Assembly: GCA_038087875.1 (NCBI GenBank)
Contig: CM075998.1
Span: 930,001 to 994,000, forward strand
DNA: 64,000 bases
Origin: Malacoraja senta
Lineage: Eukaryota
Direction: 5' to 3'
Position numbers and translations under genes: made by a program. The notes beneath the pieces are model-generated. The model was given only the letters and a program-made list of their open reading frames with translations, had not been told where the DNA came from and ran no database searches. Positions 7,411 through 59,129 of the stretch are shown here, in pieces; within the stretch, counting starts at the first letter, position 1; each line of letters starts with the position of its first letter.

Positions 7411-7616
7411 GGAGAACCTGCAGATATTAAAACAATTGTAATTTTTAGATTTAATAACATTTCCATTTGCAGCCTTCGAACACAGCTGATCCCCTTGCTC
7501 TGATGTTCTCCTGCACTGTTAGGTATATGTCTAATTCCTCTTTTCAATGTATGATCGACTTGGCTTCAGAGGCCATTTATCTTTTTAATTTGTTACCAAT
7601 TGCCCGCAGATGGCTG

Positions 7617-18372: not shown

Positions 18373-18382
18373 CTGTTCTAGT

Positions 18383-26659: not shown

Positions 26660-27164
26660 AAGTGTGCGGACGGATTGTCTTCCATGTGGACGCCGCGCTT
26701 GGGCGGGAACTAAGGCGGCTGCTCGTTCCTCCCCGCGAGAGCTTGGGCGAGATCGATGGGCGAGGGCGACACAAAGGCGGGATTGTCCACGTGAGGCAGC
26801 CGCGGCTTTAAATTCAGCTTCAGTTGACGCTGGCCGAGGTGGTGTGTGTGGAGAACCGGGGGTGGCATAATCCCTGTGAAATCACGAATTCTCTATGAAA
26901 TCGTTGTTTAAAGAAAGAATATTGAAGCTGATTGTTTATCGATACACCTTTTTAGCTTCCCCCTCCCCCCACACAAGGTGCGCTGACCATTTCAGTCATT
27001 ACTTTTTTTTCTAGAATTATCATTTTGTACTTTTCCGTTCCTGAACGGTAAGTTTGCGAGTGCGATTTCATAAAAACAGTGGGATTTTAAATTGGATCTG
27101 TCTTGTCATCCAATAAATTAATTCATGTTGTGTTCTTTCCAGTTTCGGAACTTCGCTGGAGTTG
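26660..27164 (+). promoter_or_regulatory. CpG promoter and non-coding 5' exons of the orphan coiled-coil gene
   Basis: GGCGGGA at 26702 and 26776, CACGTG at 26788. Donor gtaagt at 27048. A 22-nt exon at 27143-27164 (ttctttccag...gtaagt). Confidence 0.6.
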
Positions 27165-28006
27165 GTAAGTTTGATGACTTGTGAAGGGAGCCTTTGTTTT
27201 AATAGGGCAGGACATCATAATAATTCAGGATGAGATAACTGTCATTATGGAATATAATCTGATGAATGAAAAATCTGATACAATTACCAGAAGATGTGGT
27301 GTACCCGTGTGTTGCTTGGATTCATTGTTACATCATGGTGATGCACTTGGTCTAAGCAAGCCATCAGGCCAGGTTTTAATTTAGCCAGCCATAGTTCAGC
27401 CTGACCTTTCAAGCATTGAAGTGTTGATGGTGATTGGTAGCTAATAAGAACAAGGTTGACATTTGCCATCCAAAATTAATAATAAAGTCAAAGTTGGAGG
27501 ATCTCAGCGGGCCGGGTAGCATCTGTGCAGGGAAATAGACGGATGATGAGACGTGAAGGGAAGGGAGAACGCTGGAAAAGAGGGGTGAGGGTGGAGGCGA
27601 AGTTTGACAAGTGGTAGGTCGAGACAAAAACAACTGCAGATGCTGGAATATTGAATAAAACAACGTGCTGGAGGAACTGTCAGGGAGCATCTGTGGAGGA
27701 AAAAGGACAAATGAGTTGGGACCCTTCAGACTGACTCGCAAGGAACTGCAGATGCTGGAATCTTCAGGGAAAAATAGCACACTGCTGGATGACCTCAATG
27801 GGTCAGACAATCTGTGAGCAATGGATCAGCCCTGACCAAGATCGTTGTCTGTCCATTTCTGTCTGTCCCTCCACATTTGCTGCTTGACCTGAATTCCTTC
27901 AGCACTTTTTTTGCTCAAGATTCCAGCATCTGCAGTTCCTTGTGCCTCTGTCTTAATGATAAAATCAACTCGCTGCCCTGATATTAACAGCATGGATGCT
28001 TTGACA

Positions 28007-28009
<3 letters not shown>

Positions 28010-28040
<31 letters not shown>
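28010..28040 (+). repeat. (TG)n microsatellite
   Basis: About 15 perfect TG units. Confidence 0.95.
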
Positions 28041-28042
<2 letters not shown>

Positions 28043-28099
28043 GAGAGGAGAGGATGGGAAGACTAGTTGCCAATGAATTATTTTTTATTAATGTAGCAA

Positions 28100-29000
28100 A
28101 TAAATGTACCTGGGAGTTTCACAAGGTGATAAGGGAAGATTGCCAAAAGTTTGGCCAGAGGATTATGTTTATTTAGGCGATGTATTAAGGAAGAAAAAAG
28201 TATTGTGAGTGAATTCTAGAGCTGAGGTCCAGACAGCCCATAGGAGCAATTAAATTAGGACTGATTTTGTTTCAGGCAAGAATTTGAAGAGATTTGAGAA
28301 TGTTAAAAATTGAGTTGAACCAGGTTGAATATGGTAGTATGAGTTGAGACAGTGGCAGTAGACATTTTGAATGTTGTTTAGGTAGGGAATCCAGATGGGA
28401 GTGTGTTGGCAGAGGTGACAAATGTGTGTGATTGTGCATTTCATTAGTTAGGTGGGGTGAATCTGGGGCAGACCTGGATGGCATTACTGCAGTAGAAATA
28501 GGTGGCCTTCTGTAACCTTCTGTTCAGACATTCTTGATGGAGAGAGATAGTGTCAATGGGTAACAAACCAAGTTTGTGACTGAGACTAAAGATGATGGGG
28601 TTGATATTCCCACTGCTTGCCACTGCCTATTTATCATTGAATGTAAGATAGATTCATTGACATTTTGGAGACAATGGTGGGATCAAGAGATGTGAGTTGG
28701 TTGTTGTCAATATGCAGAAGAAAATTGATGCTGTGTTCTTGGATGACTTTGCAGAGAGGTGTTGGAGGGTGGATGTGATCAACTGCATCAGTGGACATGG
28801 AGGAATAGATTGCCAATAGTTACAATGCGTGCAATTGTAACAATGAACTTCGATCAGAGCCATTTCAGGACTGTGCTGGAAATGGAAACCTGACTGCAGG
28901 GATTCAAACCAGGAGTTCTGGTGAAGGTGAGCGTGAAGTTGAGAAGCTCTGGCACATTCAATGACTTGGGAGGACAAAGGGAGGTTGGAAGTGGGGGCAG
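28100..29000 (-). mobile_element. Old L2 LINE RT remnant
   Basis: LQSGFHFQHSPEMALIEV resembles the L2 RT motif QSGFRxxHSTETAL. Confidence 0.6.
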
Positions 29001-30639
29001 TAACATGAAAGGACTTGATTTTTTTTGGTTAGGTGATAGTGGCAGATTGAAATAAAGAGGGAGGGAGGGTGGAGAATATTCTTTGAAGGCAACTATTTAA
29101 TATTATTTCAGTTATTCTAGAGTCCAGGAATAAAACATGGGTGGTCAGAATCTAGATGAAGGAGCGAACGGTATCTTGTGGACTTCATTAATTTGGAGAA
29201 AGATCAAAGAGAGAAATTAGGAAAAGCTACAATTTGGGGTGAGGCTTGGGATAAAGGAGGCCATATGAGCTTTTTGGCCTGGTGTATTGTGTAAGAATGG
29301 GAATGGGTAGAGACTGGTTTCAATCTTAATGTCAAAGTTCTTTGCGCTTATTATTGGAGAGACCCCCTCCATTGATTACTGTGGAAAGAGCATTGACGTT
29401 AAATGATTCTCGGCTGGACGATTCCCCTCATCAATCCTTGGAATGGCATGAACATAGGAATGTGATGGACGTGTGTTAGGAGGAGGACAGCTTAGACTTC
29501 CCACAACACAGAAGTATTCAAACAAATCAATGTGTGTTTTACCAGTCATTTGATATTTTGTGTGGAAAGCTGTGCAAAGACTTAAATATACAGTACTCTG
29601 CTTACATTTGATGCACTAGAAAATTGGTAAGAAGTAATTGGGTGATACAAAGCCTGAAATTTGTGGAAGGAAGGCAATGGGGATTGATTAGTTCCATGTT
29701 TGAACCCTCAGGAATAGATGAACTTGGTATGATGAGGCTTGGTTTCAATGCTGGGAAGTCATGGAATGTGAATGTCTCTCCCAAGTTCCAAATACAGTTC
29801 AAAAGAGCAAAGTGAAGGTGGGCAGAGAAATCTCCTCAATTTTCGACAGTATTTGAGCTAAAAGAAGATAACTACTTTGGGAGGGCTCATCATCTTTTGT
29901 TTTGTGCAGGAGCCAAACCTCCAGGCCAATTTTTTTTAAAAGTCTGCATTTGGACAGAACTCTAAAGCTGAGAATGAGATTTTGAAACACAGGCATCCCC
30001 ATTTGTTTGCATTGATAGCTGTTCCATAACACTCATTAGTTAATAGCCTGGGAGTAACTTGTGTGGCAAGTTTTAAAAGAAAAATTCTACTGATCATTAA
30101 TTACTCTAATTTTTGAGCCAGCATTTGAGGGCATAGCTCTGAATGACACAGGGACATTTTAACTGCTCTTTTAAAAAAAAAAAAAATCTCAATTGAATCC
30201 ATAGAAGAAAGTACTTTTCCTACCAAACTGAACTTGAGACTACTAATTGTTCAGTCGTCAGAACCCAAACTGGGGAAAATATACACATATGGGAAACCAT
30301 TTGTAGTATATCTCTTTTCAACTTGAGACGAGCTTCATTGCATGATCACGATGATGCAATATCACAATAGGCGTTGAATATCTTGCATGAAACTGGTACT
30401 TAAAACTGGGGTATTTTTACACAATCATTTTTACTCTATTCCAAATCATCATTAATAGAACTCTTACAACTTTGTTCATTAGTAGCATGGTGATGTTTGG
30501 ATTCAACGTGGAGCAGTATTTAACCTAACTTGTCCAGTTAAGGCCACTACGTACATCTTGTATGGAAATGCTCAAAATAGGCACATATCAAGATTAGTAG
30601 TAGTTTCAGTAATTTGCCAGGTGACAAAAAAGTTAGCTA

Positions 30640-31368
30640 AGGTAGACAAAAATGCTGGAGAAACTCAGCGGGTGCAGCAGCATCTATGGAGCGAAGGAAA
30701 TAGGCAACGTTTCATGGCCGAAACCCTTCTTCAGACTGATGTGAGGGTGGGGGTGGCAGGAAGAAGAAAGGATGAGGAGGAGCCAGAGGGCTGAGGGAGA
30801 GCTGAGAAGGGGAGGAGACAGTGAGGACTACCTGAAATTAGAAAAGTCAATGTTCATACCACTGGGGTACAAACTGCCCAAGCGAAATATGAGGTGCTGC
30901 TCCTCCAATTTACGGTGGTCCTCACTCTGGCCGTGGAGGAGGCCCAGGACAGAAAGGTCGGATTCGGAATGGGAGGGGGAGTTGAAGTGCTGAGCCACCG
31001 AGAGATCAGGTTGGTTATTGCGAACCGAGCGGAGGTGTTCGGCGAAGCGACCGTCAAGCCTACGCTTGGTCTTACGGATGTAGATCAGCTGACATCTAGA
31101 GCAGCGGATGCAATAGATGAGGTTGGAGGAGGTGCAGGTGAACCTCTGTCGCACCTGGAACGACTGCTTGGGTCCTTGAATGGAGTCAAGGGGGGAGGTA
31201 AAGCGACAAGTGTAGCATTTCTTGCGGTTGAGGTAAAGCGACAAGTATAGCATTTGTTGCCAATTTCCTTCGCTCCATAGATGCTGCTGCACCCGCTGAG
31301 TTTCTGCAGCATTTTTGCTGCAGAAACTCAGCTTCAATTTTCCAGCATCTGCAGTTCCTTCTTAAACA
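30640..31368 (-). mobile_element. Penelope-like element fragment (GIY-YIG) with inverted terminal repeats and 14-bp TSD
   Basis: NLIYCIRCSRCQLIYIRKTKRRL..RFAEH (GIY-YIG). Terminal repeat is in opposite orientations at the two ends. aaaaaagttagcta occurs at 30626-30639 and 31369-31382. Confidence 0.9.
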
Positions 31369-31562
31369 AAAAAAGTTAGCTAGTTTGCTAGTTGGACAAA
31401 AAAAGGTTAATTATGTAATATGCCTTTAAAATGTTTAAGTTGTCTAAATAATGAGTCAGAAAGACAGTAGATCTGATTGTATTTTTTTAAATCCAAGTTA
31501 GGAAAGATTTAAGCTACTTACAGTTTGAGTGCAATTTAACACAATTTGTCTTGCAGATTATC

Positions 31563-34500
31563 ATGGAACAGCCTGCAGTGAAAGGTGAGTGCCAAAATCT
31601 GGCTGTTTTTAAATTTCGGATAAATCCAAATGTAGCAGTCAAGCATTGGGTGTATGTTACTAGCACAGTGTCAAAAGTGAGAAGAGAAAATCAAATCAAA
31701 TTTTCTGCTAGGTTTTCCTGACCTTTAACTCCAATAGGATCTAATGATTTACAAGCATCTGAAAATATACAGAAACTTAACTGTTATTAAATTCTAGTTG
31801 ATAAAATGTAACTATTTGGAACATTTTCTTATGGGGGTGTCAAAGCTGTGGCTTTAAAAGATTAAATTGTGTTTGAACAGCTCCACCTTGGCAGCTAGCT
31901 TGCACAACTAGTTGCAACTACTTGCAAGGAATGCCATGACAGATGAACTAGAAATATTAAATAACTAGTCTTTTAAATGAAGTGTATTAACCTTGGGTAA
32001 GTCCAGGGAAATGTGGGTGGATCATATGGTTTTGTGTGGCTTGGGGAGTAATGTCTTTGGTTACGAGCACTAAACACAGGCAAGCATATGGACTCTTGGT
32101 TGTATTCCTCTCTGCTAATTTGGTTCCATTGTGGAACTGAATCTGTAGAGGTAGATACAACAAGTGGCCAATATTCATTCATATATGCATTTGGCGTTGC
32201 TAACTAAGGACCAATTTCTTGCTGTATAATTCAACATAATTCAAATAATATTACTTTGACATGCAAGTAGCTTTTCTACTGTATTATTGATCAACTAAAC
32301 ACCTAAATTGGTGGACAGTTTAAGCATTTTAAAAGTTCTATGTGACTTGGCATTTCTCTTTTTCTATTTTCAGATCTATTTCTCTCTAACTGTTCTTCCA
32401 TCCTCCTACCCTGCTGTGTAAATTAACCTATCTTTTCAAATTTTTACTAATTCTTGGCTCTTAACTGAATTGTTAAAAGAAAGCTCCAAAGGTTACGACA
32501 ATTGACATAGACAAATAAAATGTCTGGATGATTAAATTATTCCTTGGCATGGTAAGAGTAAATAGAATAATTTGTGATATTGCATTGTTTCAAGGACTTG
32601 TTTCAATGTAATAGTTGTGAGTGTGTTTGTGTATCATTGAGGTAAGCTTGAATAGCAGCCTGGGATTTGAGCTTGTGTTGTCAGAATGGAGTCCAGCACT
32701 CTATCACTGCAATCACTTAAAAATATATATTGTCTAGTCAATTCTGACACACTCCTGGTGCTATATTTTCAGAAAGTTCCAAAAATCTGTATCTGGAAAG
32801 GGTTTGAGTTTCTCATTGCTTTACTGTTTCATTTCCAGGCATCTTTTCTTTCTTATAGACTGTATTCCAAAGAAGAGCTGGGGTGAGATTATGGATGAAT
32901 TGGATGAATTGGGTGAACTGGATTGTGGTGAGTGACAGGGAAAATGGATTAGTTCCATTTTCACAGTGGGTGGTTCACCAACACACAAGCCAATCCCTTT
33001 CGCCTTCCACCACTGCCCCCCCCCTCCTCCCCAATGTGCCTACACTTCAGGAGAGTGTGAGAGTGGATGAAAGGATGCCTTTGGATTGTGTGTATATAAA
33101 CACCTGTTCATACAAAGTGAGAGTTAATACGGGACGTTTCCTGTTTAAAGGTCCAAGATACTCTGATGCATTATTTAAATTACTTTTAGAATTCCTTTAG
33201 TCAGTAGTAAGTAAATGATGACTTTGGAGGCATTGTTGTCACCAACAAAGTACTTTCCTGAACATTGACAAGCACTCTTCCTAGCTTAAACCTGCTTCGT
33301 AGCATAAGCACCCATACATTTCATCCCTCAACAATATAGTAAGTGAATTGGAGCAATTGGTGAAGACTACCAACTACAAGTGGAAAATGCAAAGTAGCTA
33401 TGGCAAGAAGGAACAGAACTTACTAATGAGGCTGTGACCCAGAACATCTTGGTTTCATTATGATCTTATCTTCAAAAGGAAAGTTTAGAAGAAATTTTGA
33501 GCACTTAGTCCGTTTACAATTGCTGTTAAGAGGCAAATGAATATGACGGGACACTTGGAGCATCATTACAGATGTGTGGGAAGGACTTGATGTAGAAAAC
33601 AATGGAATGATTGGCATCTCTATGGTGCTCTGTAACTGAGCTATAGAACTGGGAGACTATAGCAGAGAGTTCTACACTGGGGCTATCAAGACCGCGTGCA
33701 CCTGTTTACAACGGCCTGTTATTGCTGGATAAGATGCTGGGAATCGTCAGGGAAGAACAGTGGCAACATCCTGCCTCTTTCTCAGAAGGTTGATATACAA
33801 AGTTGTCATGTATGTCAGGCAAGGTTTTGCAGATAGTATTGTGATCAATTGTTCAATGCTGTTGCTGAGCAGAAGTTAATGACCTGAAATTGAAATCTGG
33901 CAAACGGCTGAAGAGAATATGCAACTTCATGCAGCAGAAAGTTACCAAGCCCTCTTATCTCTTGTTGCCATGTTCTCTGAAGCTTGATCTCATTAACTTG
34001 GATAATGTAGGTTAGCTGGCTTCTGACCAACGTGAGTTCTCTTCTGGTACATCTGAGTAGTCCTCTTTACCATCAAATGGACGAATCGCTCTTTTCTGTA
34101 GCCGTGCCAGCAATTTCCATTCATCTAGCATTTTAACATGGAGAAATAACACAACACCTTGGAGGCTTAATCAAAAAATGTTTACATGGCCAAAGAGGAA
34201 AGTAAGAAGGGTGACGCAAAGCTTAATCACAGGGATGGGTTTAAAGGAGAGACAGATAATTTGGATTGAAAGAGTACAGGCTTTGGGCAACTAAAACCAC
34301 AGAATGCTGAAGGTGTGATGTGATTTATTGAAGGGAGATAGTTCACCAAGGTCAGAGTCTGAGTTTGTGTGTGTACAGTGGTGATAGAATTGGAGATGGT
34401 TATAAAGATGAGGCAGTCCATGGATTTGGAATTGGTTACAAAGATGAGGAGATCCATGGATTTGGAATAGTTGTTCCATTACTATTGTTTGGCATGAAAG

Positions 34501-37500: not shown

Positions 37501-40500
37501 GAACTTTTTACAAAAATCATTGCAGATAAAAATCTAATTGAAAAATGTGACCATGATCAATGATTCAAGAAGAATGTCAATCTAGTGATGGGCAGCAAAT
37601 ACTGACCTTGCCAATCATCATCAGAACTAATTTTTAAATATTGCATTTTCAATATAATAATAAGTTTATTATATTGAAGTTCCCCAACAAGGCATGAGCG
37701 CCAGAGCCCTTTTAAAAAGTAATCAAATCTAATTAGATTGATCTTTTATTGATTAATATTTTATCTTCATTCTATAATTATAGATGGTGCTGAAAGTTTA
37801 CAGTCAGTCAATCAGTGAGTATTTTCTTCCTTCCTTATAATTTAGTACAGCTGCCTGACACACCAAGAGGCTGTGTGACCTGCAAATGATGCTTCCTAGT
37901 TACAGAGATGTGCCACTCTGGGTATGATGATGGGCGGCACAGAGGTGCAGCTGGTAGGGCTGTTGCCTCACCACAGTGGCCTGGCTTCAATCCTGACTTC
38001 TGGTGCTGTCTGTGGAATTTGCATGTTCTCCCTGTTACTGCGTAGGTTTCTCATAGGCACTCCACATTCCTCCCGTGATCTAAAGTCATTTGGGTTGGTA
38101 GGCAAATAGGCTGTTGTAATTCCCTTGTGTGTAGATGAAAGGCAGAAACTTGGGAGGGGTGGGATGGTGAGAGAGGTGGCAAGGTGAGAGAATGTTGATG
38201 GGAACATGGAGAGAATAGGTTACAGGGACAATCAATGGGGGAACAGGATTGCTCTAAGTAAAATAGACTTAATATGCCAAAATAGCCTCCTTCTCTGTCT
38301 TCATACATTTTTTAATGCTGTATGAATATGTGTCCAGCAGTTACTGATTCTGCTTGTTCCTTCCCGAATGTGTGTCTCCATGAGGACTCTCATTGTGACC
38401 AGGAATAGCTGGATAAAGTCAGCATTTTTCTTCTGTAGAGGAAGCATACGGAAGGGTTTTCTCTATGATCATGCCGAAAATTAGTAATGAGAAGGAAAAG
38501 TTTGGGTTTGAACCCATCAACCAGAATTTCCCTCCCCTTATCCATCGGGAACGTTGCTCTTCTTCCTCCCCTGTCTCCTGTGTGCACATAATAATGCTTC
38601 TGACTCTCTAAGGCTCTTTGGCATAACCTTGTGGTGCTTCAGGAAATTGGTTGGGTTGAGGTGAATCCAGAGGGGTGAACAGAGCATATTCTGCTATCTC
38701 TGTGCAAAAGAGAAAACATTGGTATGTAGTTTCTTAACTGAGAAGGAAAACACCCAAGTTCAGGCCATCCCTGTGTAAACAACGGGTTTTGTTTTTATAT
38801 GTGTCCATCAATTGATTTTGTCCAAAAGTTGGAAATTACACAATAATCACTTGATATAGCAACCATGCCTCCACAGAAATGTAATAAATGGCATCAAAAG
38901 GACATAAGACTGATAAGAAAGAACAATTACTGGAAGTGGAGAGAGAGGGGGTGGAAGATTGCAACCTTCACGTGGTCCGCCCTGTTTCGACGAATGCAAT
39001 CAACCTGGCGTGCACAATCAAGTAAGATCAAATAGAACAAGTTGTCCTACAACTTTAGGCTGTGCACGCCATACGCAAGATGAAGAAGAGAGAGAGGAAA
39101 CTACTTTTGCCGTTCGTAGGAACGAACGTATGCACACACGTCAGATGTTTGAATTTATTAATATGGGAGCTCATTAATATATAGGGATGTCCATAAATTG
39201 GGCATTTGTAATCCAGGGATGGTCTGAAATGAAAGGAAATGTTAAATGCTAGAACTAATTGTGTTGGCCTTAAATTTCAAACTTGGCTGGTTAGCCTATC
39301 CTGAGTTCTTTAACTTCCAGGTCTACAAGATTCCTTTTAAATTTCAGCAAATAGAACACATCCTATCTCCATTGGTGACCTCAAAAATGCTCATTACTTC
39401 GATATTTTTTTGTGTATAAAATATTTGTCTTGCAGATCTCTCATAAGTGAAGAAATTAGAGATCTGCTCCTTGAGTATGAGAAACGTTATGAAGCTATGG
39501 TATGTCATTCATATCCTTGCATCTACAGATGAGACATCTGTGTCATTCAGGTGTTATTTCTACCTCTGAGATACATAAAACTCTGTTAATCCTGAATGCC
39601 TGGATCTTTGGTGCCAGACTTGCAGATTTTCCAGACTGTTGAATGTTATTCCAATCAATACTGTCACACATCATTAATTCACTTATTTTGGATGTTATAC
39701 ATTAGTATAATAATTTTTCTAGCAAATCCAGAAAGTTTAAAAGAAGCATGGGAACAAGAGCCCCAATGCATTTAAAGGGAACAGGGGAACAGAGGGCCCA
39801 GTGTGTTAAAGGGAACACGTGTATTGGCATCTGGTAAGCCAGATGCAGAACCGCGGGGATTTCTGAATAATGGGATTGAGTTATTGTTCCAATTGGTTTT
39901 ATTTTGAGATATACTGAATCATCTGCCAAATATCATCGCTTCAAATTTGGCATCACCAAAAAGAAAAATAATAGAACTGCAGTAACGTGTTTGTGCCCTA
40001 ATGGTTTATGTTCCAAAATGTTCACTAGGTAGATAAATGTCACAGTACAGTCAAGAAGGGTAATGTAAATGTTTATAAAGCTGTTTAGTGGGCTGGCATC
40101 TATAAAGTACCTATGATGCTTAGAGGTGGCTGATGCTGGAGTACTGCGGTACATTAGAAGGATACTTGTAACTGCATAGTATATTTTGGGAGGGATTAGG
40201 ATCAATTAAATCATGCTAGGATTATGTTAAATCCACTTGATTCTTGGATTATGCATTGTATTAGATGTGCCTAGTTGTAACACAGAAAAATAAAGATGTG
40301 AACATATTTATGAAGATGTAATTATGTGATTCTGTATTTGTAGATGTTTATGTTATTATTAACGATAATTCTGATTCCTCTATTTTTGGCCTTGGTATTC
40401 AGGAAAAGGAAAGGAAACATCTCAAAACAAAGGCAAAATTCCTGAAGGTAGATAGATTTATCAATACATTTGTCACCATCAAAAGAAGTCAAGGCCATCT

Positions 40501-43500
40501 TTCTATTTTGTTCTTTGGAAAAAGGACAGACAAACTGGTATTTCCAATACATAGAGCCCATGAGTTTCTGGCCTGTGGGATTATTGGACAAAAATGAAGC
40601 ATTATAAATGTTACAAGGTAAGTCATCTAAGGCAATTATAGTGCAGCACCAGGAGGTGCAATTACTTGTGATTTAGGAACAGGTCGCATATTGGTCCTTT
40701 TCTTCTTGGAATTATATATGTTTGAGATCTGAGGAGGTTGATCAAAAAGAGAAAATGTAAGTCAATTCTCACTGTTGTGATTCCCATTTTGGCAAAAAAA
40801 ACATACGTACCAATGACTTGCAAGTTGTCCCTGAGGTACGTAGATATAGGGATGGTGGTCTTGGCTATGGCGATTAGATCTTGGCTGATCTGGACCTTTG
40901 CCCCTTGTACCCTTGCGCATTCCATGATGGCTGGAAATACCAAGTTTTCAACCTAACGTATTAATTTTCCATCTTTCAAAGTGTGTTTTGTGTGTGTTGA
41001 TGAGGAAAGGCAAAATTAATTTGAAATGTTTAGGTTGAACAGGTTCTAGGAGACCTAAGATAGACACAAAATGCTGGAGTAACTCAGTGGGACAGGCAGC
41101 ATCTCGAGACACCATCTAGGAGACCTGAGTTTGGTCTTGGCTCCTCAAATCTTGCCTGGAGCTGAGTCATTTGCCTGATCTTCGTTCTTCCAACTAGAAT
41201 TCAGCCGTACCTGATTTCTCCAAGTGCGGAATTGAATCAAGTTAGGAAACGGATGATTTATTTAAACTAGCACACAAGACAAAGCAACAAAATAAGAAGC
41301 AAAAATATCAAATTAGTTTAACAACAGGTTGCAGACATTTTTAATTACTGTTCTAATGGTAATTTACTTTCAGAGATTAATTTGTTTTGTCTTTTTCAGT
41401 CGTTCTGTGCTTTTTAACTGTTTTATAGCAGCAAATACTTCGTAATTTAGTTATTGTTAGGCTTTTAGCTTCTTACTTTTTTGTAACAGTTTTAACTTAG
41501 GCAAATGATTTGAGTCTGCTTCAACGTTCCATTGGGCGTGCCAAGATCTGAAGAGTATTGTTGTCCATGAACACTCTTCTTTTCCATCCTTATAGCTCAC
41601 CAAATTAGAAGTGACTGAGCAACTGGAAAGTAGGTAAGTGAATGTTCCTGAAATGTTAAGCCATGTATCTAATAGCTGGATGTGGATGCCCTAACACCCA
41701 TTGTATTGGGTCTTGTATTTTGTGTCTATCTTCGGTTTAAACCCGCATCTGCAGTTCCTTCCTACACATTTGTATTGGGATTAGCTTTGCCATTGGGATT
41801 CAGCTTCGCATATTTTAGTGGTGTAAAAATGTTGCATATTGCACATGTGCCTATAAATTCAATTGTATCAAGCCTAAATGGCAGTGTTAGGCAAACATTT
41901 TTTTCCCCCAGTGAAACATGATTGTGGGGTTATTTTGTGCCACCACATAAATTTGGCAGGAAACTTCCTAATGTCAGTCACCCTTGCATTTATAATATGA
42001 TTTCATCGTCAGGAGTGCAAAAGATGATGCCATTCCCTGTGCAATATTCCTTTTGGAACCTGCAAGAAAAAATGGACTGCATTGTCCTGGTGATCTTTGT
42101 TGTTGGGCAGTCCCAGAATAACAGTTTTGCTATCCCTGGTCTAGAATGCCTGCAAAGTAAGTAAATGACTTAATTTTGTCCTTGGTTTCACTGTTCACCA
42201 TTCCCCAACTCCCCCCCCACTGATCTGCACCACACCACTTGATCCACCTGCTGTATGTTTTCTTTCTCACATGTTAGGCAAATGCCTATGTTGGCACTTA
42301 GACGAGCAAAGCCACCCACTGAAATGTTAAATCTTTATGTAACTTTGAGGATTCGAGTTCATGAAAATGTAGCACAAAAATAGCTCATGTTGGTATTATG
42401 ATGGTAGAAATTTGAAGGATTTAAGAGTGACATTAGAAGTATATTGTGTTCTCAGAGTACATGTACCTACAAATATATTTACCAGCAGCATCAAAGTAAC
42501 ACTGAACTCTTTTTGATAGTTCATCATAATACAATATATTAAAAGCAAGCAATGCTTCGGTACTGTTACCATGGCAGTCCTTAAGTCCATAGCTTTTTCC
42601 TCCTTCATAAGCTCCCATAATTTATGAACTGGGGAGTGGTTCAGTTATTCAGTCAATTTCAGGTATTTCCAATACTTCTAATTAGAGGATACTACGTAGC
42701 TCATAAAGCTCTATAGTTGCTTTCACTTTTAGCTGCAAGCATGAAGCTTTTTTCACTGTACAGCCTCTTTTACTGTGAGGAGCTGTTCTTCACTGAACTA
42801 CCTGATGTTCTGCTGACATGATCCTGGTACATCAGCAAATCTACCCAACAACTATGTAATAATTCCTAATATGACCTGATCTTGCAAAGCCATGCATGGA
42901 CAACCTGTGCTTCTTCCAAACATTAATTTCTTCTGGTCTTGTCAGCGCTTAGACACGGGACTTCATAATTATTCTTGTGGAGAGATAGAAAATAAATCAA
43001 AATAAAGTTATTGACTGTTGGTGGAAAGGAAAATGGAAAGGAGGCGTTCCACAGCAAGTTAATGGGAGCAAACAAGATGGAGTAGGAGCTGATGCTAAAC
43101 CAGATGAGAGCTTATGGTATTAGAGGGAAGATATTAGCATGGACAGAAGATTGGCTGAATAGCAGAAGGCAATGAATGGGAATAAAGGAGGCCTTTTCTG
43201 GTTGGCTGCTTGTGATTAGTGGTGTTCCGCAAGGGTTGGTTTTCCGCTACTTTTCACATTGTATATTAATGATATGGATGATGGAATTGATGGCTCTGCG
43301 GCCAGATATACAGATGATACGAAGATAGGTGGAGGGGGGCAGGGAGTCTTCAGAAGGACTTGGACAGGTTTGGAGAGTGGGCGAAGAATGGAATATAGTG
43401 CAGCAAAGTGGATGATTATGCACTTTGGTAGTAGGAATAAAGGCACAGACTAATTTGTGAATGGGGAGAGGATTTGGAAATCTGAGCTGCAAAGGAACTT

Positions 43501-46500
43501 GGATGTGCTGTTGCAGGATTCCCAAAAGGTTCATTTGCAAGTTGAATCAGTAGTAAGGAGGGCAAATGCAATGTTAGCATTCATTTCGAGAGGACCAGAA
43601 TATAAAAGCAGGGACGTAATGCTGAGGCTTTATAAGAGACTGATCAGACTGCATTTGGTGTATTGTGAGCAGTTTGGGTCTCATACCTGGGGAGGGATGT
43701 GCTGGCATTGGAGAGGGTCCGGAGGAGGTTTACGAGAAAACCCCGTGGATGATTGAGTTAATGTATGATGAGCATTTGACGGCTCTGGGCCTGTACACGT
43801 TGGAGATTAGAAGGGTAAGGGAGGACCTCATTGAAACTTACCGAATAATGAAAGGCCTGGATAAAGTGGATGTGGAGAGGATGTTTCCACGAATGGGAGA
43901 GTCTTGGACCAAAGGGCACAGCCTCAGAATCTCAGAATTAAAGGACGTACCTTGAAAAAGGAGATGAGAAGGAATTTCTTCAGACAGTGGGTGGTGAATT
44001 ATCCCATCACAAGCAGTTTAATAAATCAAATTTATATTCTTTGGTGATTAGAAGAATAAAAGGGGATGTTTCCACTTGTGGGAGAATCTCAAATGTGGGA
44101 ATATAGTTACAAAATTAGACAGTAGTCATTTAAAATTGAGGTCCATGGGAATTTCTGACAGAGGGCGATGAATATGGAATTCTCTCCCCCAGAGGGTTGT
44201 CAAGGCTAGATCACTGGAAGTATTTAAAGAGGAAGTAGATACATTTAGCAAAGATCAGGGAATTGAGAGCTTTGGGGAACTGGCATAGTAGAGCAGATCT
44301 GCCATGATCATATTGAACAGTGGGGCAGGCTTGAGAATATAAATTGCTTTCATCTGCTCCAATTTTATGATGTTCTTACATTCTTATTACCTTTTCCTTA
44401 GGCTGAGGGAGAAAGATGCACAAATTTCAACAATGGAACAAGAAATTATGCAACTGAATGAAATGTTTGAAATGCACAAAAGCAAAAATAATGTGAGTGA
44501 TTGATGTATCATGTTTAAACATCAGCAATTCTGTTGCATTCAAGTAGTGGGATGGTTCAATATATTTGTTTAACAGTAGCTCATGCTCTTTTTGAAGCAT
44601 TGTCCAGTGAAATGGTACAGTTTCAAAGTTTAATTAAATAATGCTGTGTAAGTTTGGGGAAGTAATTTTTCCACTTTTGGTCTCCAGAGCTAGAGGTTGA
44701 TATGCATTGTGTTCAGTGGGTACCTAAAGGTCAAGGCTTGACACCTTCAGCATATAAATGCAAGGCCTGATGTCTGCTGAAAACCCATCATACATAAATG
44801 GAGAGGCAACAAGCTTACCGAACTGCACATCTATTACTTTTGTTGTTATGAGTGAAAGTAAAATATCAATTGGGGCAGAACAACAGAACAAAACTTCCCC
44901 TACAATCCAAAGCTAATTTCTAGGCACTCGGATCTACATCAAACATTTGGTTGGGTACAGCATACTTGTCTATATTCAGCCAAAACCTCGCAAGCGCTCA
45001 CTAAACCAGTGTAAACTTTCTCCATTGCCTTTGCCAATTATCATTATGGCCTGAATTCGGAACAATTTTCTATTATGTGCCCTTGGATACTAGGAGCTGA
45101 GCTGACATTTTCAAATCAATTTTGTTACAGAAATCTTAAAGCAGAGAGTGCAGGTTATTGCCCTGAAGCAAGGATGGTTCAAGTCACTTGTCCTAACCTA
45201 TTGCGCCACCTAGTGCCCAGACCTATTGAGAGATCCTCCTTCTCTGTATGTAAATGTCAAATTTTGCCAGCAGTTTAGGAGGGAACATGGAACAAATAAT
45301 ATAGGAGTAGGTCTTCTCCACCATTCACCGATATTACGTTTGATCTGCCACCTCAGTACCAGTTTTAATCAAGTGAAAATTGATTTGTCAAGTTTTTGTC
45401 CACCCACTCAACCCAATAAATTGTATAATCACAACTGATATGAATCTCCAAAAATTGAGAGGAGGCACTGGTGGTCTCAGGTTTAACCTTGCGGCTCAGC
45501 TTTGGGCTTGAAGATGTGGCACTAACAGTCCCTGGATTATCCTGGTGACTCAGTCTTTGCCTCTCTGTGTGTGAATGCAGTCGCACGTTTTTTGTGGACA
45601 GAAAGAGGCACTGGCGTTTCAGGCTTACCACGGCCACTCAGTCTTGGCCTCAGTAGAGGAGCTGGCTGTCTAGGGCATCTTCCAGGCAGTTCAGTCTTGA
45701 CCACGCAGTGGCTTCGGTGGTCTCCCTGTCTCCCTTGCACATTGGTCTTCAGTGACCTGTGTATAAGAGGGACAGGATTTGTGTGGTTTGCTAATCTTCC
45801 ATTGACGAAGTGTAGATGCTCTTTTCCTTATGTTGGTTTTGAGACATGCCCACAATCATACAGTGCCTTATCTTTAATTTTCTCCGACCCCCCACCCCAC
45901 CCCATCTTTATTTCTTTAACCTGTTGATGCTCTGATGTGGTTTTTCTCACACTACTGTCTTTGAGGACTGGTTCTTGAAACAGGTGGTCATTTGAGAGGT
46001 CAGCTTTGTTCTATTATGTAAATCTGTGTGCTTTTGGATCTAGGTGACATTTCAAAATGGAGGCAGCATATTCCCAGAATGGGAATTGGTATTACTAATG
46101 TCTTGATTAATGGATAGATCATCATTGGCAAGGAAGCTACCACAGTCTCTTTCCACATGAACAATCCGGCTGCAAGTGCCACACTTGATGTATCAGTTTG
46201 TAGTAGCCCAGTGAGCTGCAGACTCACTCCCAGTTTCCCAGAGGTTAATATGTGCAGGAGTCAGATCTTCACGTCCCACAGATTTCCAAAAAGACCAAAT
46301 CGAGAGGTGCTTTGATACAAGAACTTGCAGGAATGACCTGATTGCATCATGAACTGCCACCCTATCATTGGTCACTGTGGTGCTTTATTTAATGGCAGAA
46401 TAGTGTACTGTTACCTGGTCTGGGTCACACACAAAACTGTTTGATGCACAACTGAATAATGTACATCATAACAGGACTGCTGAAACTAACACCAATAGCT

Positions 46501-49500
46501 CGGATCCCTGTTCTCGCAAACAGTTTTAGATGTTTCCTTGCAAACAACTCACCCATCAACCTTAGGAGATAAAGGCCTTGGAAAATCCTTTGAGTAAAAC
46601 AATATTATTGGGAAGCCAATTGCTGTACGTGATGAGTTTTATTTTAAGGTGTCAATCACAAAGTTTGTAAAATTGCTTTTGCACTTTCTGTGCATATGGA
46701 CATGCACAATGAACATCATATCTAAGAAGTTCAACCGTGCATGCAAAAGCTAACTTTCACAATGAATTTGAGGCCTGCTTCGAAACTTAGATGGGTGATG
46801 TATGAGCAAATTCCAACCAATAGGTGTCCAGTGCTATTGGAAGTGGCTGAAGGTAGGTGACCGTTAAGAATCTATGGATAAGGTGCAGAGATTCATCTCG
46901 GTAAGCTTCACTAGTCTTATCAGTACCACTAGGTACACTTTCCCAAAAAAGTCCAAATTGGGCACTTTGATGTGTTGCCTCGCCAGGTAGCATGAATGAT
47001 ACCCCTTCCATATCTACAGAGGCATATTCCTTCAATATAGTGATGACTTTAACTGCAATAGACAGAACTTTCATGCTGTGGGGTGCTGTCTGAAGGTCAT
47101 GCTGGAGTACATAGCACATCCTAAATTGCAGGTAATCTCTTCCACTGCATAAATCCCTGATCATATGATGCAATTCCTGGGCCATGTGTAGCATTTATCA
47201 GTTTCCAACTTTGCAGTGTCTCCTGTCCTCCCAGGAGTTTCTTCCGTACAAAATCTAACACCCATTACCAGACTCTCTGCAATGTCCATGATTGGTGCTG
47301 CTTACAGTTGAACTGGTGTGCACCAAATGAATGCTGAACTGCATAAAGGCAGCAAGCAGTCGGATGAAAGTGGAACCATCTGATGCACAGGTTGAGTACC
47401 TGTTTTATGCAGGTGCTCAGCAAACCAAGAACTGAACTGAAAAACTGCATGAGAACAGAAATTTGGGGTGGACCCAATTCATATTAATAAATATGATCTT
47501 GTTATAAAGAATGAGGCCAGCCCATGCACAAAGTGCACCTCAGAAACTAAATTTATTTTTCTCCCACAGAATCGGGAATACAATGCTGAATGGGCTGCAG
47601 CCGATTTTCCCAATTCCACGGGCCAGACATGCCACTGCCAAGAGGCTGCACGCCAAGTGCACAACTGCAGAGTCAGTCCTATGGTACAAGACGATACTGA
47701 ATGAATATTTTCCAATACTATCAATGAGCATTGAAAATAACACCACAATATGGTGTAAGGACATCCTCTGCAGTGGACCTGTAGAATGCATTTTCATTCC
47801 CATGATTTTTCACTGTTCTTGAGTTTAACCATGTTGCATGGGGAAGTGGGGGAGGGGGTGGGGGGGTCGTGTATCAAATAAGCCCAAGCTTCCCCCACAA
47901 GGAACAGAGGAAAGAGAGATGTCAAGTAGGCACCTTTGGGGAAATTTATTTTTGGATATTTTCAGAGTAATAGCTCAGAAATAATAACCTTCATTGTTCC
48001 TGATATGTAAAAGTAACAAACAGCCTTTTCTTGCTGAACACAGTGCTATATGTATGAATAGTAAAGATTTCAGAACTAGTTAATTAACTTCATATACTGA
48101 AGAGTGGAAGGTGTCAGCACTATGTTTCTATAAGAAATAGGTGACAAATGTTCATGTCAGGTACAAAGAGAGGAACTGAGTTACAGCAAACTGAATAGGG
48201 TGAATGGCATTTTTTCTTATTCCAAAATTCTGTTTTCCCCCCATCCCCCCCCCCCCCCCCACCATTATAGCTCACCAAATTAGTAGCAGTAGAACAACTG
48301 GAAAACAGGTAAAGTACTTTATCATCACTGTCAATGTCATGTAATGTAAATGTCTGATTGCATATTTGTCATGCCATCCTGTTCTATTGCCCAAATCAAA
48401 TGGGCAATATATATATATACTAGACTAGACTGGGACCCGTTGGGTCCCAGCATCACATGGGAGAGCTAGTCCTCCAAAGACAACACAGCTTTAGCATTTC
48501 CAAACCATATTTTCAAACCACATTAAGAGCACTGACAGGTCAGTAAAACCACTCACAGTTTAGTAGACATGTGTTCAGTGTTATTCACAGCTCAGACTGA
48601 GTAACGTGACCCTCTTGCTCCCCCATCTTGCAGAGACTGACTGAGGCACTCAACACTTCCGGGTTTTATGGTCCCCCCGGAAGGGGTGTCGCCTTCAGGA
48701 GAGAGAATCTCAACATTTTTAAAACACTAATAACTCTTTTATTTTTCATCAATGGGAAAAATCCTCTTGTCCTGCGCAGCAGAGGGGGACTCTGAGTAAG
48801 ATGGCCAAAAATCACAGCCATAAGTGGCACCGTTTTTTCTAAAATCAATATACAGAACAACAGGAACTGGTCAAGATCAGACTTTTAGTAATATAGATAT
48901 ATTCTATTGCCCACATCAAATGGTTCATTCATATATATATAAATTACCAAAATCATCATGAACAGAGGGGAGAGTTTCTTCACTAGAGTTAAGTTATCTG
49001 GCTGAGGTGACAAGTGAAACAGAGTCTCTCATTGGCATGGAAAAGATCCATTAGAGAATGCTACTGGGAGATCTGGGGAGAAAAAAGTTTTCCACCTATC
49101 CTGTCAGCTGGTATGATGCACATATGTTTTAAGAATAAAAATGGATTGGAAAAATGCTGACATTTAATTTTGTTTTAATTTCTCTTGCACTCATGAGCAT
49201 CAAGCTATATACTTTTTTATTGGTGATTTGACTTGATAAATACTGTTTCTTTAATTGATATGATTTTTTGGTAATTGTATAGTCATATTCAATTATGTTA
49301 GTTGTCTTGTACCAGCTATGGAGCTTCTGTTTCACCTTTTCTATTCTACATATTGTCTTTTGTTCCTTTATTAGGACTTCTCTCATATTTCACCCTCCAA
49401 GAACATAGCATTCATGTTTTTCCCCCCCTATCCTTCTGAATCAGTCCAGCGACTGGTGGTGATTTGGAACCCACTGCCTAAAAAGGTGTTGGAGGCACTA

Positions 49501-50996
49501 ACATTTCATCGTTGTTGAAGTGTACTTGGATGAGCACTTGAACTTCTTCAAATTGCAGAGCTCTGGACACTGCAATGTGAAATTAGTTTTGGTCAGCACA
49601 GATACAACAAGCAGGATGGTAGATTTCTCTGATCCTTTGAGATCTGGTTTATCAGACCTTAGAATGAGCCTGGAAACTACCCACTCAACCATATTGGGTT
49701 TAATACCTTCTCTTGACATTATAAGAAATGATAGTCCAGTAAAAAAAATTCTCTGCATACAAGCACTTATTTGTGAATGAATTGTTTGCATTTGAACTCA
49801 TTTTGATGTACAAGAACAAGAAGCGCAAGGTGAAAACTACTAGGATTACTGTACATCCCATTCTCTGCCTTTAGCCTGAAAGAGAAAGATGCAGAAATTG
49901 CAACACTTGAACATGAAATTGTAGAACTCAGTGAAATCGCTGGAACACAAAGAATCAAAACCAAAAGTAAGTGATAACATTTACTGTCCACTAAAGAAAC
50001 TTGATTTGAGAACCTTGAGTAAGTTCTTACAAAAATCTTCTTTAAGATTTTTGTTTAAGTACTTACTCGGGTTCTCCAATCAAGTTTGTTAGTTTCATCA
50101 ATCAGGTTTTGTGGTAAGATAGCAGATCTTTAATGTGTTCACATACAACCTCAATGGTGTGGTTCCTTCCTCGAGTGTTTATTTGTTATATGCATTGGAT
50201 ATGAACTGGAACAATGAAATCTAGCTTCAAAGGCACGCTAAATGCAACAACAATAAATATACAATAAATTATCAATTATTCTAAGTAAACCAGACCATAA
50301 CAATGCAAAAACGAAAGTACGTATAGTAAAGTCAAAGTCAAATTTATTTGACTTTGTAACCATAGTAGTGCAAAGTTAGTAGTGGCTTGGTGTTAAGGTA
50401 GGGTACTCTTGAAACTTGAGTTTCTTCACTGAGTATGAGTGAGAAGACTAAATGCTAAACCTTCTCGTAACATGAAAAGGAAAGATCAACCCTCATTACG
50501 GCTCTCTGGACATGCCACCAACAGTTGGAGAGTGGTACTGGAAGAGTTCTGGAGACCAGTTTCTCTCCCTCTCAGCTGGATATGGGAGTTTGTAGGGAAT
50601 AAAATAGACAGGAGCAGCTAATAACATTTATTTTTGTTTTTACCACTCTGGCTTCATGAACATCGAATTATTTGTAGGCAGAAGGAACTGTAGATGCTTG
50701 TTTATATTGTTCAAATAAAACAAAAAACTATGAATGCTGAAAATCTGGAATAAAAACAGTGTTGGAAATTCTCAGCAGGTGGGGCATAATCTGGAGAGAG
50801 AAGCAGAGTTCATGTTTCAGGTCACTATTCATTCATCATGAACATTTCCCTGTGAACAGATGTAACCTTGCCTGATGAATATTTCTAGCATTTTTCCACA
50901 ATTGCATAAATTGATTCCTTTCCCTTTTTCATTTGTTTTTGACTGTTAAATATTTGTTCTCTGGTTAATTTTCCTTTCTGTTCTTTTGTAGATTGA
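31563..50996 (+). CDS. Unannotated-looking 126-aa coiled-coil protein, 8 coding exons: 31563-31584, 37784-37814, 39436-39499, 41596-41633, 44402-44492, 48271-48308, 49875-49966, 50992-50996
   Basis: All introns are GT-AG with pyrimidine tracts and compatible phases (1,2,0,2,0,2,1). Protein: MEQPAVKDGAESLQSVNQSLISEEIRDLLLEYEKRYEAMLTKLEVTEQLESRLREKDAQISTMEQEIMQLNEMFEMHKSKNNLTKLVAVEQLENSLKEKDAEIATLEHEIVELSEIAGTQRIKTKN*. The exon pair is internally duplicated. AATAAA at ~51046, ~51610 and ~51711. Confidence 0.7.
34576..35770 (+). mobile_element. Possible hAT-type non-autonomous DNA transposon fragment
   Basis: Begins CAGGGCTCTCACTTAAC (hAT-like CAGGG terminus) with a subterminal inverted repeat gttgcc/ggcaac. 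No matching right terminus found. Confidence 0.3.
35940..36125 (+). repeat. G-rich minisatellite, ~22-24-nt unit TCAGTACAGGATGAATGGGGG(G)n, about 8 copies
   Basis: Direct inspection; the length of the G-run varies between units. Confidence 0.9.
36126..36340. mobile_element. Two Penelope terminal repeats in inverted (head-to-head) arrangement
   Basis: Minus-strand hammerhead core at 36190-36217 and plus-strand degenerate core at 36250-36277. Perfect 21-bp inverted repeat 36223-36243 / 36270-36290. Confidence 0.75.
37933..38230 (+). mobile_element. tRNA-derived V-SINE (HE1-like)
   Basis: tRNA-like head (ggcacagaggtgcagctggtag...gcttcaatcc) followed by the V-domain gtctgtggaatttgcatgttctcc. 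Its 3' half is also present at 13690 onward. Confidence 0.7.
38948..39087 (+). mobile_element. 140-bp retroposon 3' end with (AAG)n tail and 9-bp TSD
   Basis: Absent from the paralog at ~14510. gagagagag occurs at 38939-38947 and 39088-39096. Ends cgccatacgcaagatgaagaa. Confidence 0.8.
43075..44380 (+). mobile_element. Degenerate CR1 LINE fragments
   Basis: Frame-shifted RT pieces: YINDMDDG, YTDDTKIGG, RANAMLAFISRG, EDLIETYRIMKGLD. Confidence 0.85.
48420..48897 (-). mobile_element. Non-autonomous Helitron (complete ends)
   Basis: On the minus strand the 5' end is A^TCTATATTACTAAAAG and the 3' end is hairpin GGGACCC-AAC-GGGTCCC followed by CTAG^T. Inserted between A and T. Confidence 0.85.
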
Positions 50997-52169
50997 AGAC
51001 TGTGACAACAATTTGCTAATATGGATTTATCCTGTATAAAGATCATAATAAAATATATAAGAAATCCCAGCTGAGTTTTTTTTTCCATTATATACGGTCC
51101 CATGTGGAATCAGCCACAACCCAGAGAATTAAATGTCATGTTAGTGTTGTCACTATGACAGGAATATACAGTGAGAAAGTATATAACAGCACCAAGCCTT
51201 TATACAGTACACTGACTGTGTAAAGTTAAAGAAAAATGATTTGACAAAACTGATTTATTTACAAATACAGTTTAACGAAAGGATGTTTTAATGCTACGTA
51301 CAAACAAATATAGGAGGTGAAATTGGCCTTGGATTAATTGGCCTTGATGAATCGGCAGCCCCCTGCAAACACTGTTTATTCTCAGTGAAATCAATGGAAA
51401 AGAAAATTAGGCAGCTCACAAAACAGGCTACCATTTTGCTATCACTCGTTTTACACTGACATCCTGTGTCATTTTCTTCTCCATATGCTCTTAATTGCCT
51501 GCTGTAATCTGTTCCATTATACATTGCAGAAGCGTACCTGGAACCTGTTGAATGTTATGTTTATCAACACGCATACCTGATTGATTAGCAGATATTCATT
51601 ATAGTTGCAAATAAAATTTCATATCCTGCAAGCCCCTAGTACGATATCTGTTTATCCAATGGGCATAAGTTAGAATAGTAATATATTTTTGAAATAATAA
51701 TTAAATAAGCAATAAATGGTTTAAAACCAATACAGACTTGCAGACTGCTTTCATGGAAATTGCCTGGGTAGAAAAGTTGTTTGTTACATTGAGATGCTTC
51801 AGTAAAATTAATGGAGATGTGTATAGTGCTATATTACTACACATCTATTTGAACTCTTCTATTAAAGTGAAAAGTTTTCACATGGTCTTATCAAATTTAA
51901 TGTGGCTTCAGCAACTTTACAATGATCTCTGATAAGCATATTTCATTTTGCAAAAACTGACTCCCAAGATATCGGGGCACTCAACTGTTCTGTTAAATAA
52001 CTGCTTAGTTATTATTAACAACACTCAATTATTGCTAAATGTACACAACACTCTGATCTTGAACACCCTAGCAACTAGGTTCATTATTTTGAGTGCTTCT
52101 AAACCAACAGGCATGAGGCCATCCAAAACTGGACATAATTACTATCATGATTACTATATTACATAATTA

Positions 52170-55520: not shown

Positions 55521-55635
55521 ATGGCGTTGACCGAGAGCCGGTATGATGCATCCGAGTTACCAGACTTACTCCCCGTTTATTACAGGCGCCTCTTCCCGTA
55601 TCCTCAGTACTTCAGGTGGCTGAGTTATGGCGGTG
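55521..55635 (+). CDS. PRIM1: DNA primase small subunit, exon 1 only
   Basis: MALTESRYDASELPDLLPVYYRRLFPYPQYFRWLSYGG matches the PRIM1 N-terminus (ELPELL..YYRRLFPY..Y.RWL.YGG). Donor G|gtaagg, phase 1. Confidence 0.92.
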
Positions 55636-55849
55636 GTAAGGCGAAAATATTGAAATGAATCATTTGTTTTCTTCTGCAGGTAAAGTTTGCTGATCTGTGA
55701 AAATATTTCGACACTGACTTATTCTTACGTCCACTTTCCAATTAAATATACCTTTCCATGTTCCTGTGAACAATTGTGGAAAGTGTGGTGAGCTGGGTAG
55801 CGTTTATGTGGAGCTGGTGTGCAGTCAATTGGTGCATGATTGGCTGCCT

Positions 55850-59126: not shown

Positions 59127-59129
59127 GTG

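What the first reader, a model, noticed from the sequence alone, without database searches (positions are those of the whole stretch)
26660..51720. Hidden multi-exon orphan gene encoding a 126-aa coiled-coil protein, invisible to the ORF track
Seen: eight tiny coding exons (22, 31, 64, 38, 91, 38, 92 and 5 nt) with canonical splice sites chain together in compatible phases into an uninterrupted, E/K/Q/L-rich heptad protein (e.g. L-x6-I-xx-M-xxx-I-xx-L). There is an upstream CpG promoter, non-coding exons and downstream AATAAA signals. Known: in human the GPR182-PRIM1 interval holds SDR genes (RDH16/SDR9C7/HSD17B6), and no SDR motif is seen here. Inference: this is a lineage-restricted or fast-evolving gene that I cannot assign to a family.
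Basis: partly seen in the sequence, partly recalled or inferred. Interest (0 to 1): 0.8.

Follow-up and report, generated by a model that had tools for sequence, protein, structure and literature searches.

The report
Real, conserved small coiled-coil gene

Summary
All eight predicted exons are real. A 949-nt transcript contig (L001) splices them exactly as drawn, from a CpG-rich first exon (26807-27047) to a terminal exon ending 14 nt after an AATAAA (51066).

The gene is not an orphan. Orthologs are annotated in Scyliorhinus canicula (LOC119958254), Heptranchias perlo and Chiloscyllium punctatum, under unrelated coiled-coil names. In S. canicula and H. perlo it lies directly upstream of PRIM1, as here.

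It is not fast-evolving either. It is 94% identical in protein to H. perlo, with dN/dS 0.16. Synonymous divergence is about a quarter of that in the first exon of neighbouring PRIM1. The 69-nt exon sits in a 151-nt stretch identical between the two species.

No relative was found outside elasmobranchs and no Pfam family fits.

The 114-nt exon is conserved in sharks with its splice sites but carries stop codons there. It is open only in this genome.

Function is unknown. It is most likely a rod-forming adaptor whose cassette exons switch an acidic Trp motif in and out.

The scan noted the duplicated exon pair before (s1-210412), on this same stretch.

The parts
25751..27250 (+). CpG-rich promoter region around the first exon
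   Evidence: CpG observed/expected 0.66-0.89 and GC about 0.5, against 0.1-0.3 in the flanks. Window 26721-27432 aligns to H. perlo at 73%.
26807..27047 (+). Exon 1, 5' untranslated (the start is the contig's end, so the true start may lie further upstream); donor gtaagt
   Evidence: L001 bases 1-242 match at 97.9%; the donor is seen.
27143..27164 (+). 22-nt non-coding micro-exon, bounded by ag| and |gtaagt
   Evidence: L001 bases 243-264 match with 2 mismatches; 0 matches expected by chance.
31556..31584 (+). Exon carrying the start codon (ATG at 31563, A at -3 and G at +4, in-frame stop upstream in the transcript)
32859..32927 (+). It is skipped in H. perlo isoform X4.
   Evidence: L001. It is 69/69 nt identical to H. 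perlo and differs at 2 bases in C. punctatum.
32791..32941 (+). 151-nt stretch perfectly identical to Heptranchias perlo: 68 nt of intron, the 69-nt exon and 14 nt of intron
   Evidence: three-species alignment.
37784..37814 (+). 31-nt coding exon
39436..39499 (+). 64-nt coding exon
40403..40447 (+).
   Evidence: L001. It is 45/45 nt identical to H. perlo and present in the S. canicula and C. punctatum proteins.
41596..41633 (+). 38-nt exon, first copy of the repeat module
44402..44492 (+). 91-nt exon, first copy of the repeat module
   Evidence: All five sampled words are held by small runs of several related organisms.
47570..47683 (+). Its shark counterparts carry stop codons.
   Evidence: L001. 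Joint 44492>47570 (GT..AG) appears in contigs of runs X10, X12 and X13. The shark counterparts are compared.
48271..48308 (+). 38-nt exon, second copy of the repeat module
49875..49966 (+). 92-nt exon, second copy of the repeat module
50992..51066 (+). Terminal exon: stop TGA at 50994-50996, short 3' UTR, AATAAA at 51047-51052
   Evidence: L001 bases 875-949 match at 100% and the contig ends 14 nt after the signal.
12201..15244 (+). Truncated upstream copy of the gene's 5' half, made by a segmental duplication. It has copies of exon 1 (12201-12441), the micro-exon (12537-12558) and the 45-nt exon (15206-15244). It lacks any counterpart of window 27187-38113, which holds the ATG, 69-nt and 31-nt exons; the 64-nt exon is also missing.
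55521..55637 (+). First coding exon of the downstream neighbour PRIM1 (synteny anchor and divergence baseline)
   Evidence: tblastx against the H. perlo PRIM1 start.

Best explanation
This is the ortholog, in this genome, of an elasmobranch-restricted protein-coding gene. The gene is annotated but uncharacterised in sharks as S. canicula LOC119958254 and as H. perlo 'CCDC68-like' / 'paramyosin-like'. It spans about 24.3 kb (26807-51066, + strand), directly upstream of PRIM1. It has at least 13 exons, 11 of them coding, each contributing 5-114 coding nt.

Shown:
- It is transcribed and spliced.
- Its protein sequence is under purifying selection.
- Every coding exon is conserved in three shark orders.

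The product is a short acidic Trp-containing helix (SWGEIMDELDE) followed by one long helix of about 130 residues. That helix contains two 43-residue heptad modules, each encoded by a 38 + 91/92-nt exon pair.

Inferred (about 40%): the long helix pairs into a coiled-coil rod, and the N-terminal acidic Trp peptide is a docking motif for a partner. Frame-preserving cassette exons then tune the protein. The 69-nt exon adds or removes the docking motif, the 45-nt basic exon changes rod length, and the 114-nt exon adds a linker.

Also inferred: the unusual conservation of synonymous sites and flanking introns reflects RNA-level control of this splicing.
For: - **Transcript:** contig L001 joins all the exons and carries a 202-codon ORF with an in-frame upstream stop and a poly(A) signal.
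- **Independent splice evidence:** joint 44492>47570 is seen in three further runs of related organisms.
- **Orthologs:** found in H. perlo, S. canicula and C. punctatum, with a fragment in S. torazame.
- **Synteny:** PRIM1 lies downstream in H. perlo and S. canicula, and also here.
- **Collinearity:** exon-for-exon, with identical exon lengths.
- **Selection:** 10 non-synonymous against 14 synonymous differences over 163 codons, dN/dS 0.16.
- **Synonymous constraint:** pS 0.15 against 0.58 in PRIM1 exon 1, Fisher p = 3e-5.
- **Identical exons:** the 69-nt and 45-nt exons are 100% identical in DNA to H. perlo, and one perfect run is 151 nt long.
- **Structure:** the AlphaFold2 model has helices at 15-24 and 30-163, mean pLDDT 88.
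- **Heptads:** two segments have 88% hydrophobic occupancy at the a/d positions.
- **Alternative use of cassettes:** shark isoforms X2 and X4 skip the 45-nt and 69-nt exons respectively.
Against: - No tissue, protein-level or interaction data exist.
- A homodimer prediction gave no verdict (not evidence either way).
- Only one full-length transcript of this species was found, and it may be a minor or aberrant isoform.
- The synonymous baseline rests on 39 codons of one neighbouring exon.
- 'Elasmobranch-restricted' rests on protein databases only. No chimaera or bony-fish genome could be searched at the DNA level. Apart from one 31-residue search of all lengths, protein searches reached only relatives of about 82-287 residues.
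- The docking-motif reading of SWGEIMDELDE is pattern-based only.
Confidence: 0.85

Rival explanations
1. The transcript is a non-coding RNA, and the open frame through the exons is incidental.
For: The exons are tiny and expression looks low (contig depths of 3-6). Synonymous sites and intron flanks are conserved, which shows constraint at the RNA or DNA level.
Against: The frame is open in five species. dN/dS is 0.16, and differences are concentrated at synonymous sites (14 in 94 synonymous sites against 10 in 395 non-synonymous sites). Exon lengths and phases are kept. The heptad pattern is kept in both repeat modules.
Confidence: 0.03
2. It is a diverged member of a named coiled-coil family (CCDC192, CCDC68, or paramyosin/myosin tail), as the database names suggest.
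For: Source names. A 'faint' precomputed PF27954 (CCDC192) hit lies on the C. punctatum and H. perlo proteins.
Against: The names disagree between isoforms of the same gene: NETWORKED 1A-like, CLIP1-like, CCDC68-like, paramyosin-like. No Pfam model reaches its cut-off; the best scores are 16-21 bits against cut-offs of 27-35 bits. Profile searches of the protein collection and of the PDB return only the family itself or generic coiled coils.
Confidence: 0.07
3. The extreme DNA conservation in and around the exons belongs to overlapping cis-regulatory elements for neighbouring genes (PRIM1, NACA, GPR182), not to splicing control of this gene.
For: About 5.7 kb of the 24.8-kb locus aligns between this genome and H. 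perlo, including blocks well away from any exon.
Against: The strongest blocks are centred on exons and their splice sites. The two exons that are 100% identical are exactly the ones alternatively spliced in sharks. The 114-nt exon keeps its splice sites in sharks while losing its frame.
Confidence: 0.15

Closest known systems
Scyliorhinus canicula LOC119958254 (XP_038642597 and seven other isoforms) and Heptranchias perlo XP_067832602-XP_067832610; Chiloscyllium punctatum GCC38619 + GCC38620
   Same: About 90-95% protein identity. The order, lengths and phases of the exons match, and so does the duplicated 38 + 91/92-nt module. The position directly upstream of PRIM1 matches in H. perlo and S. 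canicula.
   Different: This genome lacks a detectable second copy of the 45/51-nt exon, which sharks keep between the two modules. Its 114-nt exon is an open, frame-preserving insert, whereas it carries stops in the two sharks examined. No protein of this species is in the collection apart from the one read from the transcript contig.
Highly conserved cassette and 'poison' exons of splicing-factor genes (SR and hnRNP genes; from general knowledge, Lareau et al. 2007 and Ni et al. 2007; not checked here)
   Same: Alternative exons and their intron flanks are conserved far beyond what the protein requires. One conserved exon (114/115 nt) introduces premature stops in sharks.
   Different: The protein has no RNA-binding domain, and autoregulation has not been shown. 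In this genome the exon does not stop the frame. Nonsense-mediated decay was not tested.
Small dimeric coiled-coil adaptors with an N-terminal short linear motif (a generic class)
   Same: A single long amphipathic helix with heptad segments follows a short acidic Trp-containing peptide.
   Different: No sequence relationship to any such family was found. Oligomeric state and partner are unknown.

Membership tests
Elasmobranch LOC119958254 gene family (unnamed) | High protein identity over the full length | tested here: met
   94% identity to H. perlo over 163 codons. E-values of 1e-48 to 1e-99.
Elasmobranch LOC119958254 gene family (unnamed) | Same exon structure (lengths 22, 69, 31, 64, 45, 38, 91, 38, 92 nt) and phases | tested here: met
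   The H. perlo exons have identical lengths and splice signals. All of them were also found in C. punctatum.
Elasmobranch LOC119958254 gene family (unnamed) | Position directly upstream of PRIM1 on the same strand | tested here: met
   (PF01896 gene downstream). Window PRIM1 exon 1 is at 55521-55637.
CCDC192 (PF27954) | Pfam model match above the gathering score | tested here: not met
   There is only a 'faint' precomputed hit. The model is not listed at E <= 0.1 in direct scans.
Paramyosin / myosin tail | Match to a myosin-tail model, long 28-residue-repeat rod | tested here: not met
   No myosin-tail family appears, and the protein has only 126-236 residues.
CCDC68 | Sequence similarity beyond generic heptads | tested here: inconclusive
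   No CCDC68 protein appeared in the searches, but those searches were limited by candidate length. No direct comparison was run, because no tool supplied a CCDC68 sequence.
NETWORKED (plant NAB/KIP1 domain) | KIP1/NAB domain match | tested here: not met
   No such Pfam hit. The name is given to some S. canicula isoforms only.
Short-chain dehydrogenases (RDH16/SDR9C7/HSD17B6, which occupy this interval in human) | SDR domain | tested here: not met
   No SDR family appears among the Pfam hits of the product.

The most novel reading that the evidence does not exclude
An elasmobranch-only gene has kept its alternative exons nearly frozen at the DNA level since sharks and batoids split. One run of 151 nt is identical, and two cassette exons are 100% identical. 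The cause would be a conserved splicing switch that controls its dose or form. That switch includes a stop-carrying 'poison' exon in sharks, which became an open, protein-coding insert in the skate lineage.
Probability: 0.3. Interest if true: 0.6.

Novelty: new member of a known kind. Interest (0 to 1): 0.4.

Why it matters
This adds a gene that appears to be missing from the protein set of this species. In the collection searched, the protein is known only from a transcript contig.

It also corrects the gene's structure and shows the gene is old and slowly evolving, not a fast-evolving orphan.

The wider interest is modest but real. A gene found only in sharks and rays is under strong constraint on both its protein and its RNA. 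It has frame-preserving cassette exons, and one conserved exon stops the frame in sharks but not here. That makes it a compact case for studying how tiny exons and their regulation are preserved, and for asking what a lineage-restricted coiled-coil adaptor does.

Tried and rejected
- It was not sent to any other outside tool afterwards. The exon-5 piece, given by window reference, was used instead.
- **No RNA run on record.** The look-up of sequencing runs listed no run recorded as RNA. The small runs that hold exon 5 were laid, and they behave like RNA assemblies: coverage only on exons and repeats, plus a spliced joint.
It is not among the 15 joints listed, but 11 more were not shown, so its absence is not established.
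- **Homodimer prediction of the 202-aa product.** No verdict: score 0.01 and pLDDT about 50. This is not evidence either way.
- **Family searches at or below chance.** These were Pfam, the PDB profile, Atlas features and structure and Rfam across 24000-56000.
- **Literature.** A search for the accession numbers found no paper.
- **dN/dS between the two internal repeat modules.** The value was 0.64 on 36 codons, too few sites to interpret.
- **DNA look-ups that failed.** P0002 is not on record as a gene product, and the S. canicula locus is too long to fetch.
- **Second copy of the 45/51-nt exon.** A search between 44492 and 47570 found nothing.
Full report
**1. The observation**

Each is bounded by AG and GT, and together they give an uninterrupted 381-nt frame of 126 codons. 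Five of the seven donors are GTRAGT; only 17 such sites occur on the + strand between 31000 and 51500.

Exons 41596-41633 + 44402-44492 and 48271-48308 + 49875-49966 are a diverged tandem duplicate (80% and 76% identity). The similarity ends at the splice sites, and the introns do not align.

**2. Direct evidence of transcription**

It found three related proteins.

One of them, P0001 (202 aa), comes from a 949-nt Logan contig of run SRR24105879 (L001). Laid on the window, the contig matches the following, in order:

| Window coordinates | Feature |
|---|---|
| 26807-27047 | exon 1, non-coding |
| 27143-27164 | 22-nt micro-exon, non-coding (2 mismatches) |
| 31556-31584 | exon with the ATG at 31563 |
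| 32859-32927 | 69-nt exon |
| 37784-37814 | 31-nt exon |
| 39436-39499 | 64-nt exon |
| 40403-40447 | 45-nt exon |
| 41596-41633 | 38-nt exon |
| 44402-44492 | 91-nt exon |
| 47570-47683 | 114-nt exon |
| 48271-48308 | 38-nt exon |
| 49875-49966 | 92-nt exon |
| 50992-51066 | terminal exon |

- The first exon lies in a CpG-rich stretch, with observed/expected CpG of 0.66-0.89.
- The contig ends 14 nt after the AATAAA at 51047.
- The ATG follows an in-frame stop in the transcript.

So all eight exons, the promoter, the non-coding exons and the poly(A) signal are confirmed. This includes the odd-looking 5-nt coding end, which is the start of a 75-nt terminal exon. Three in-frame exons (69, 45 and 114 nt) were missed.

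Contigs of three further runs from related organisms show the joint 44492>47570 with GT..AG ends. Those runs cover only exons and repeats, so they behave as RNA assemblies, although their records do not say so.

**3. Relatives**

The other hits are annotated shark proteins:

| Species | Proteins | Names given by the sources |
|---|---|---|
| H. perlo | XP_067832602 to XP_067832610 | 'CCDC68-like', 'paramyosin-like' |
| S. canicula | LOC119958254, eight isoforms | 'NETWORKED 1A-like', 'CLIP1-like', 'uncharacterized' |
| C. punctatum | GCC38619 + GCC38620 (one gene split in two) | 'hypothetical protein'; 'Myosin tail domain-containing protein' |
| S. torazame | one fragment | 'hypothetical protein' |

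The conflicting names, and the lack of any Pfam hit above its cut-off, show these are generic coiled-coil labels, not family assignments.

- H. perlo isoform X2 skips the 45-nt exon and X4 skips the 69-nt exon.
- P0001's 90%-identity cluster in the protein collection holds no other member. No protein of this species or a close relative is deposited there except the one read from the contig.

**4. Orthology and selection**

In H. perlo and S. canicula the next gene downstream, on the same strand, is PRIM1. In the window, PRIM1 exon 1 is at 55521-55637.

The window and the H. perlo locus are collinear, with about 5.7 kb of aligned blocks centred mostly on exons. Exon lengths and splice signals are the same, and C. 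punctatum keeps every exon too.

Selection against H. perlo, over 163 codons:
- 10 non-synonymous and 14 synonymous differences
- dN/dS of 0.16

The gene is therefore protein-coding and slowly evolving, not fast-evolving.

Synonymous sites are also unusually conserved. pS is 0.15, against 0.58 in the 39 codons of PRIM1 exon 1 (Fisher p = 3e-5). That baseline is small.

The 69-nt and 45-nt cassette exons are 100% identical in DNA between the two species. The 69-nt exon lies in a 151-nt perfect run, 32791-32941. No Rfam family explains this conservation.

Earlier notes of this scan call this genome a skate. My own data fit a lineage outside the sharks. The three shark orders are closer to each other than any is to the window, and PRIM1 synonymous sites are far diverged.

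**5. The 114-nt exon**

Sharks keep this exon with its acceptor, donor and flanks. The window-H. perlo alignment of the exon and its flanks shows 87% column identity, and the three-species alignment 82%.

- In H. perlo it has an in-frame stop.
- In C. punctatum it is 115 nt long, with stops.
- Only in this genome is it an open 38-codon insert.

Conservation without a kept frame suggests a regulatory, stop-introducing alternative exon in sharks. In this lineage the exon reads through. This is an inference; decay of such transcripts was not tested.

**6. The product**

AlphaFold2, run on the ortholog alignment, gives a short helix at residues 15-24 (the WGEIMDELDE stretch) and one continuous helix at 30-163, with mean pLDDT 88.

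Two segments have 88% hydrophobic occupancy at the a/d positions. The protein is acidic: 39 Asp/Glu against 24 Lys/Arg in the 164-aa form.

The repeat module was originally three exons (45/51 + 38 + 91/92 nt). Sharks keep the second 51-nt exon, and I could not find it here.

The most likely working model is a coiled-coil rod with a switchable N-terminal docking peptide. It is inferred from these features only. The homodimer prediction gave no verdict.

**7. Range**

Nothing related appeared outside elasmobranchs in any of these searches:
- the single-sequence search of representatives
- the sequence and profile searches of the protein collection
- the PDB profile search
- the Atlas searches

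These are protein-level searches, and most have length limits. Genomes of chimaeras and bony vertebrates could not be searched.

**8. Verdict**

It is not an orphan in the strict sense, not fast-evolving, and not 126 aa in the one transcript available.

It is a new member of an already predicted but uncharacterised shark gene family. The extra points of interest are its near-frozen alternative exons and the stop-carrying exon that is open in this lineage.

Noticed in passing
window 4195-19212 versus 19208-40748: A tandem segmental duplication. One unit holds a GPR182-like receptor gene (6394-7410 and 21337-22350, minus strand), the coiled-coil gene's promoter and first exons, and part of its introns. 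The upstream unit lacks any counterpart of window 27187-38113 and 39430-40049, and carries a LINE insertion (15303-18958). It therefore holds only a truncated copy of the coiled-coil gene.
   Followed up: partly
window 48431-48900: A very high-copy repeat inside the intron. It has contig depths of thousands in all four runs laid, with many variant letters and rearranged joints.
   Followed up: no
window 38368-38505, 39880-40080, 41115-41247, 42236-42445, 47988-48086: Intronic blocks 70-76% identical to H. perlo and well away from any exon seen in the transcript. They may be further alternative exons (S. canicula has extra 36-nt cassettes) or regulatory elements.
   Followed up: no
S. canicula P0015 and C. 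punctatum P0009, N-termini; window 31556-31584: The shark models with long N-termini read the start-codon exon in another frame ('YHGTACSAR') from an upstream ATG, and rejoin the main frame before DCIPKK. In this species that frame has an upstream stop and no ATG. The shark extensions may be annotation artefacts or alternative starts.
   Followed up: partly
window 30828-31337 (-) and 58024-59199 (-): Two copies of a retroelement ORF sharing the motif '...SIQGPKQSFQVRQRFTC...IYCIRCSRCQLIYIG'. One lies just upstream of the start-codon exon. The other lies downstream of PRIM1 exon 1, near the N gap at 57059-57258.
   Followed up: no
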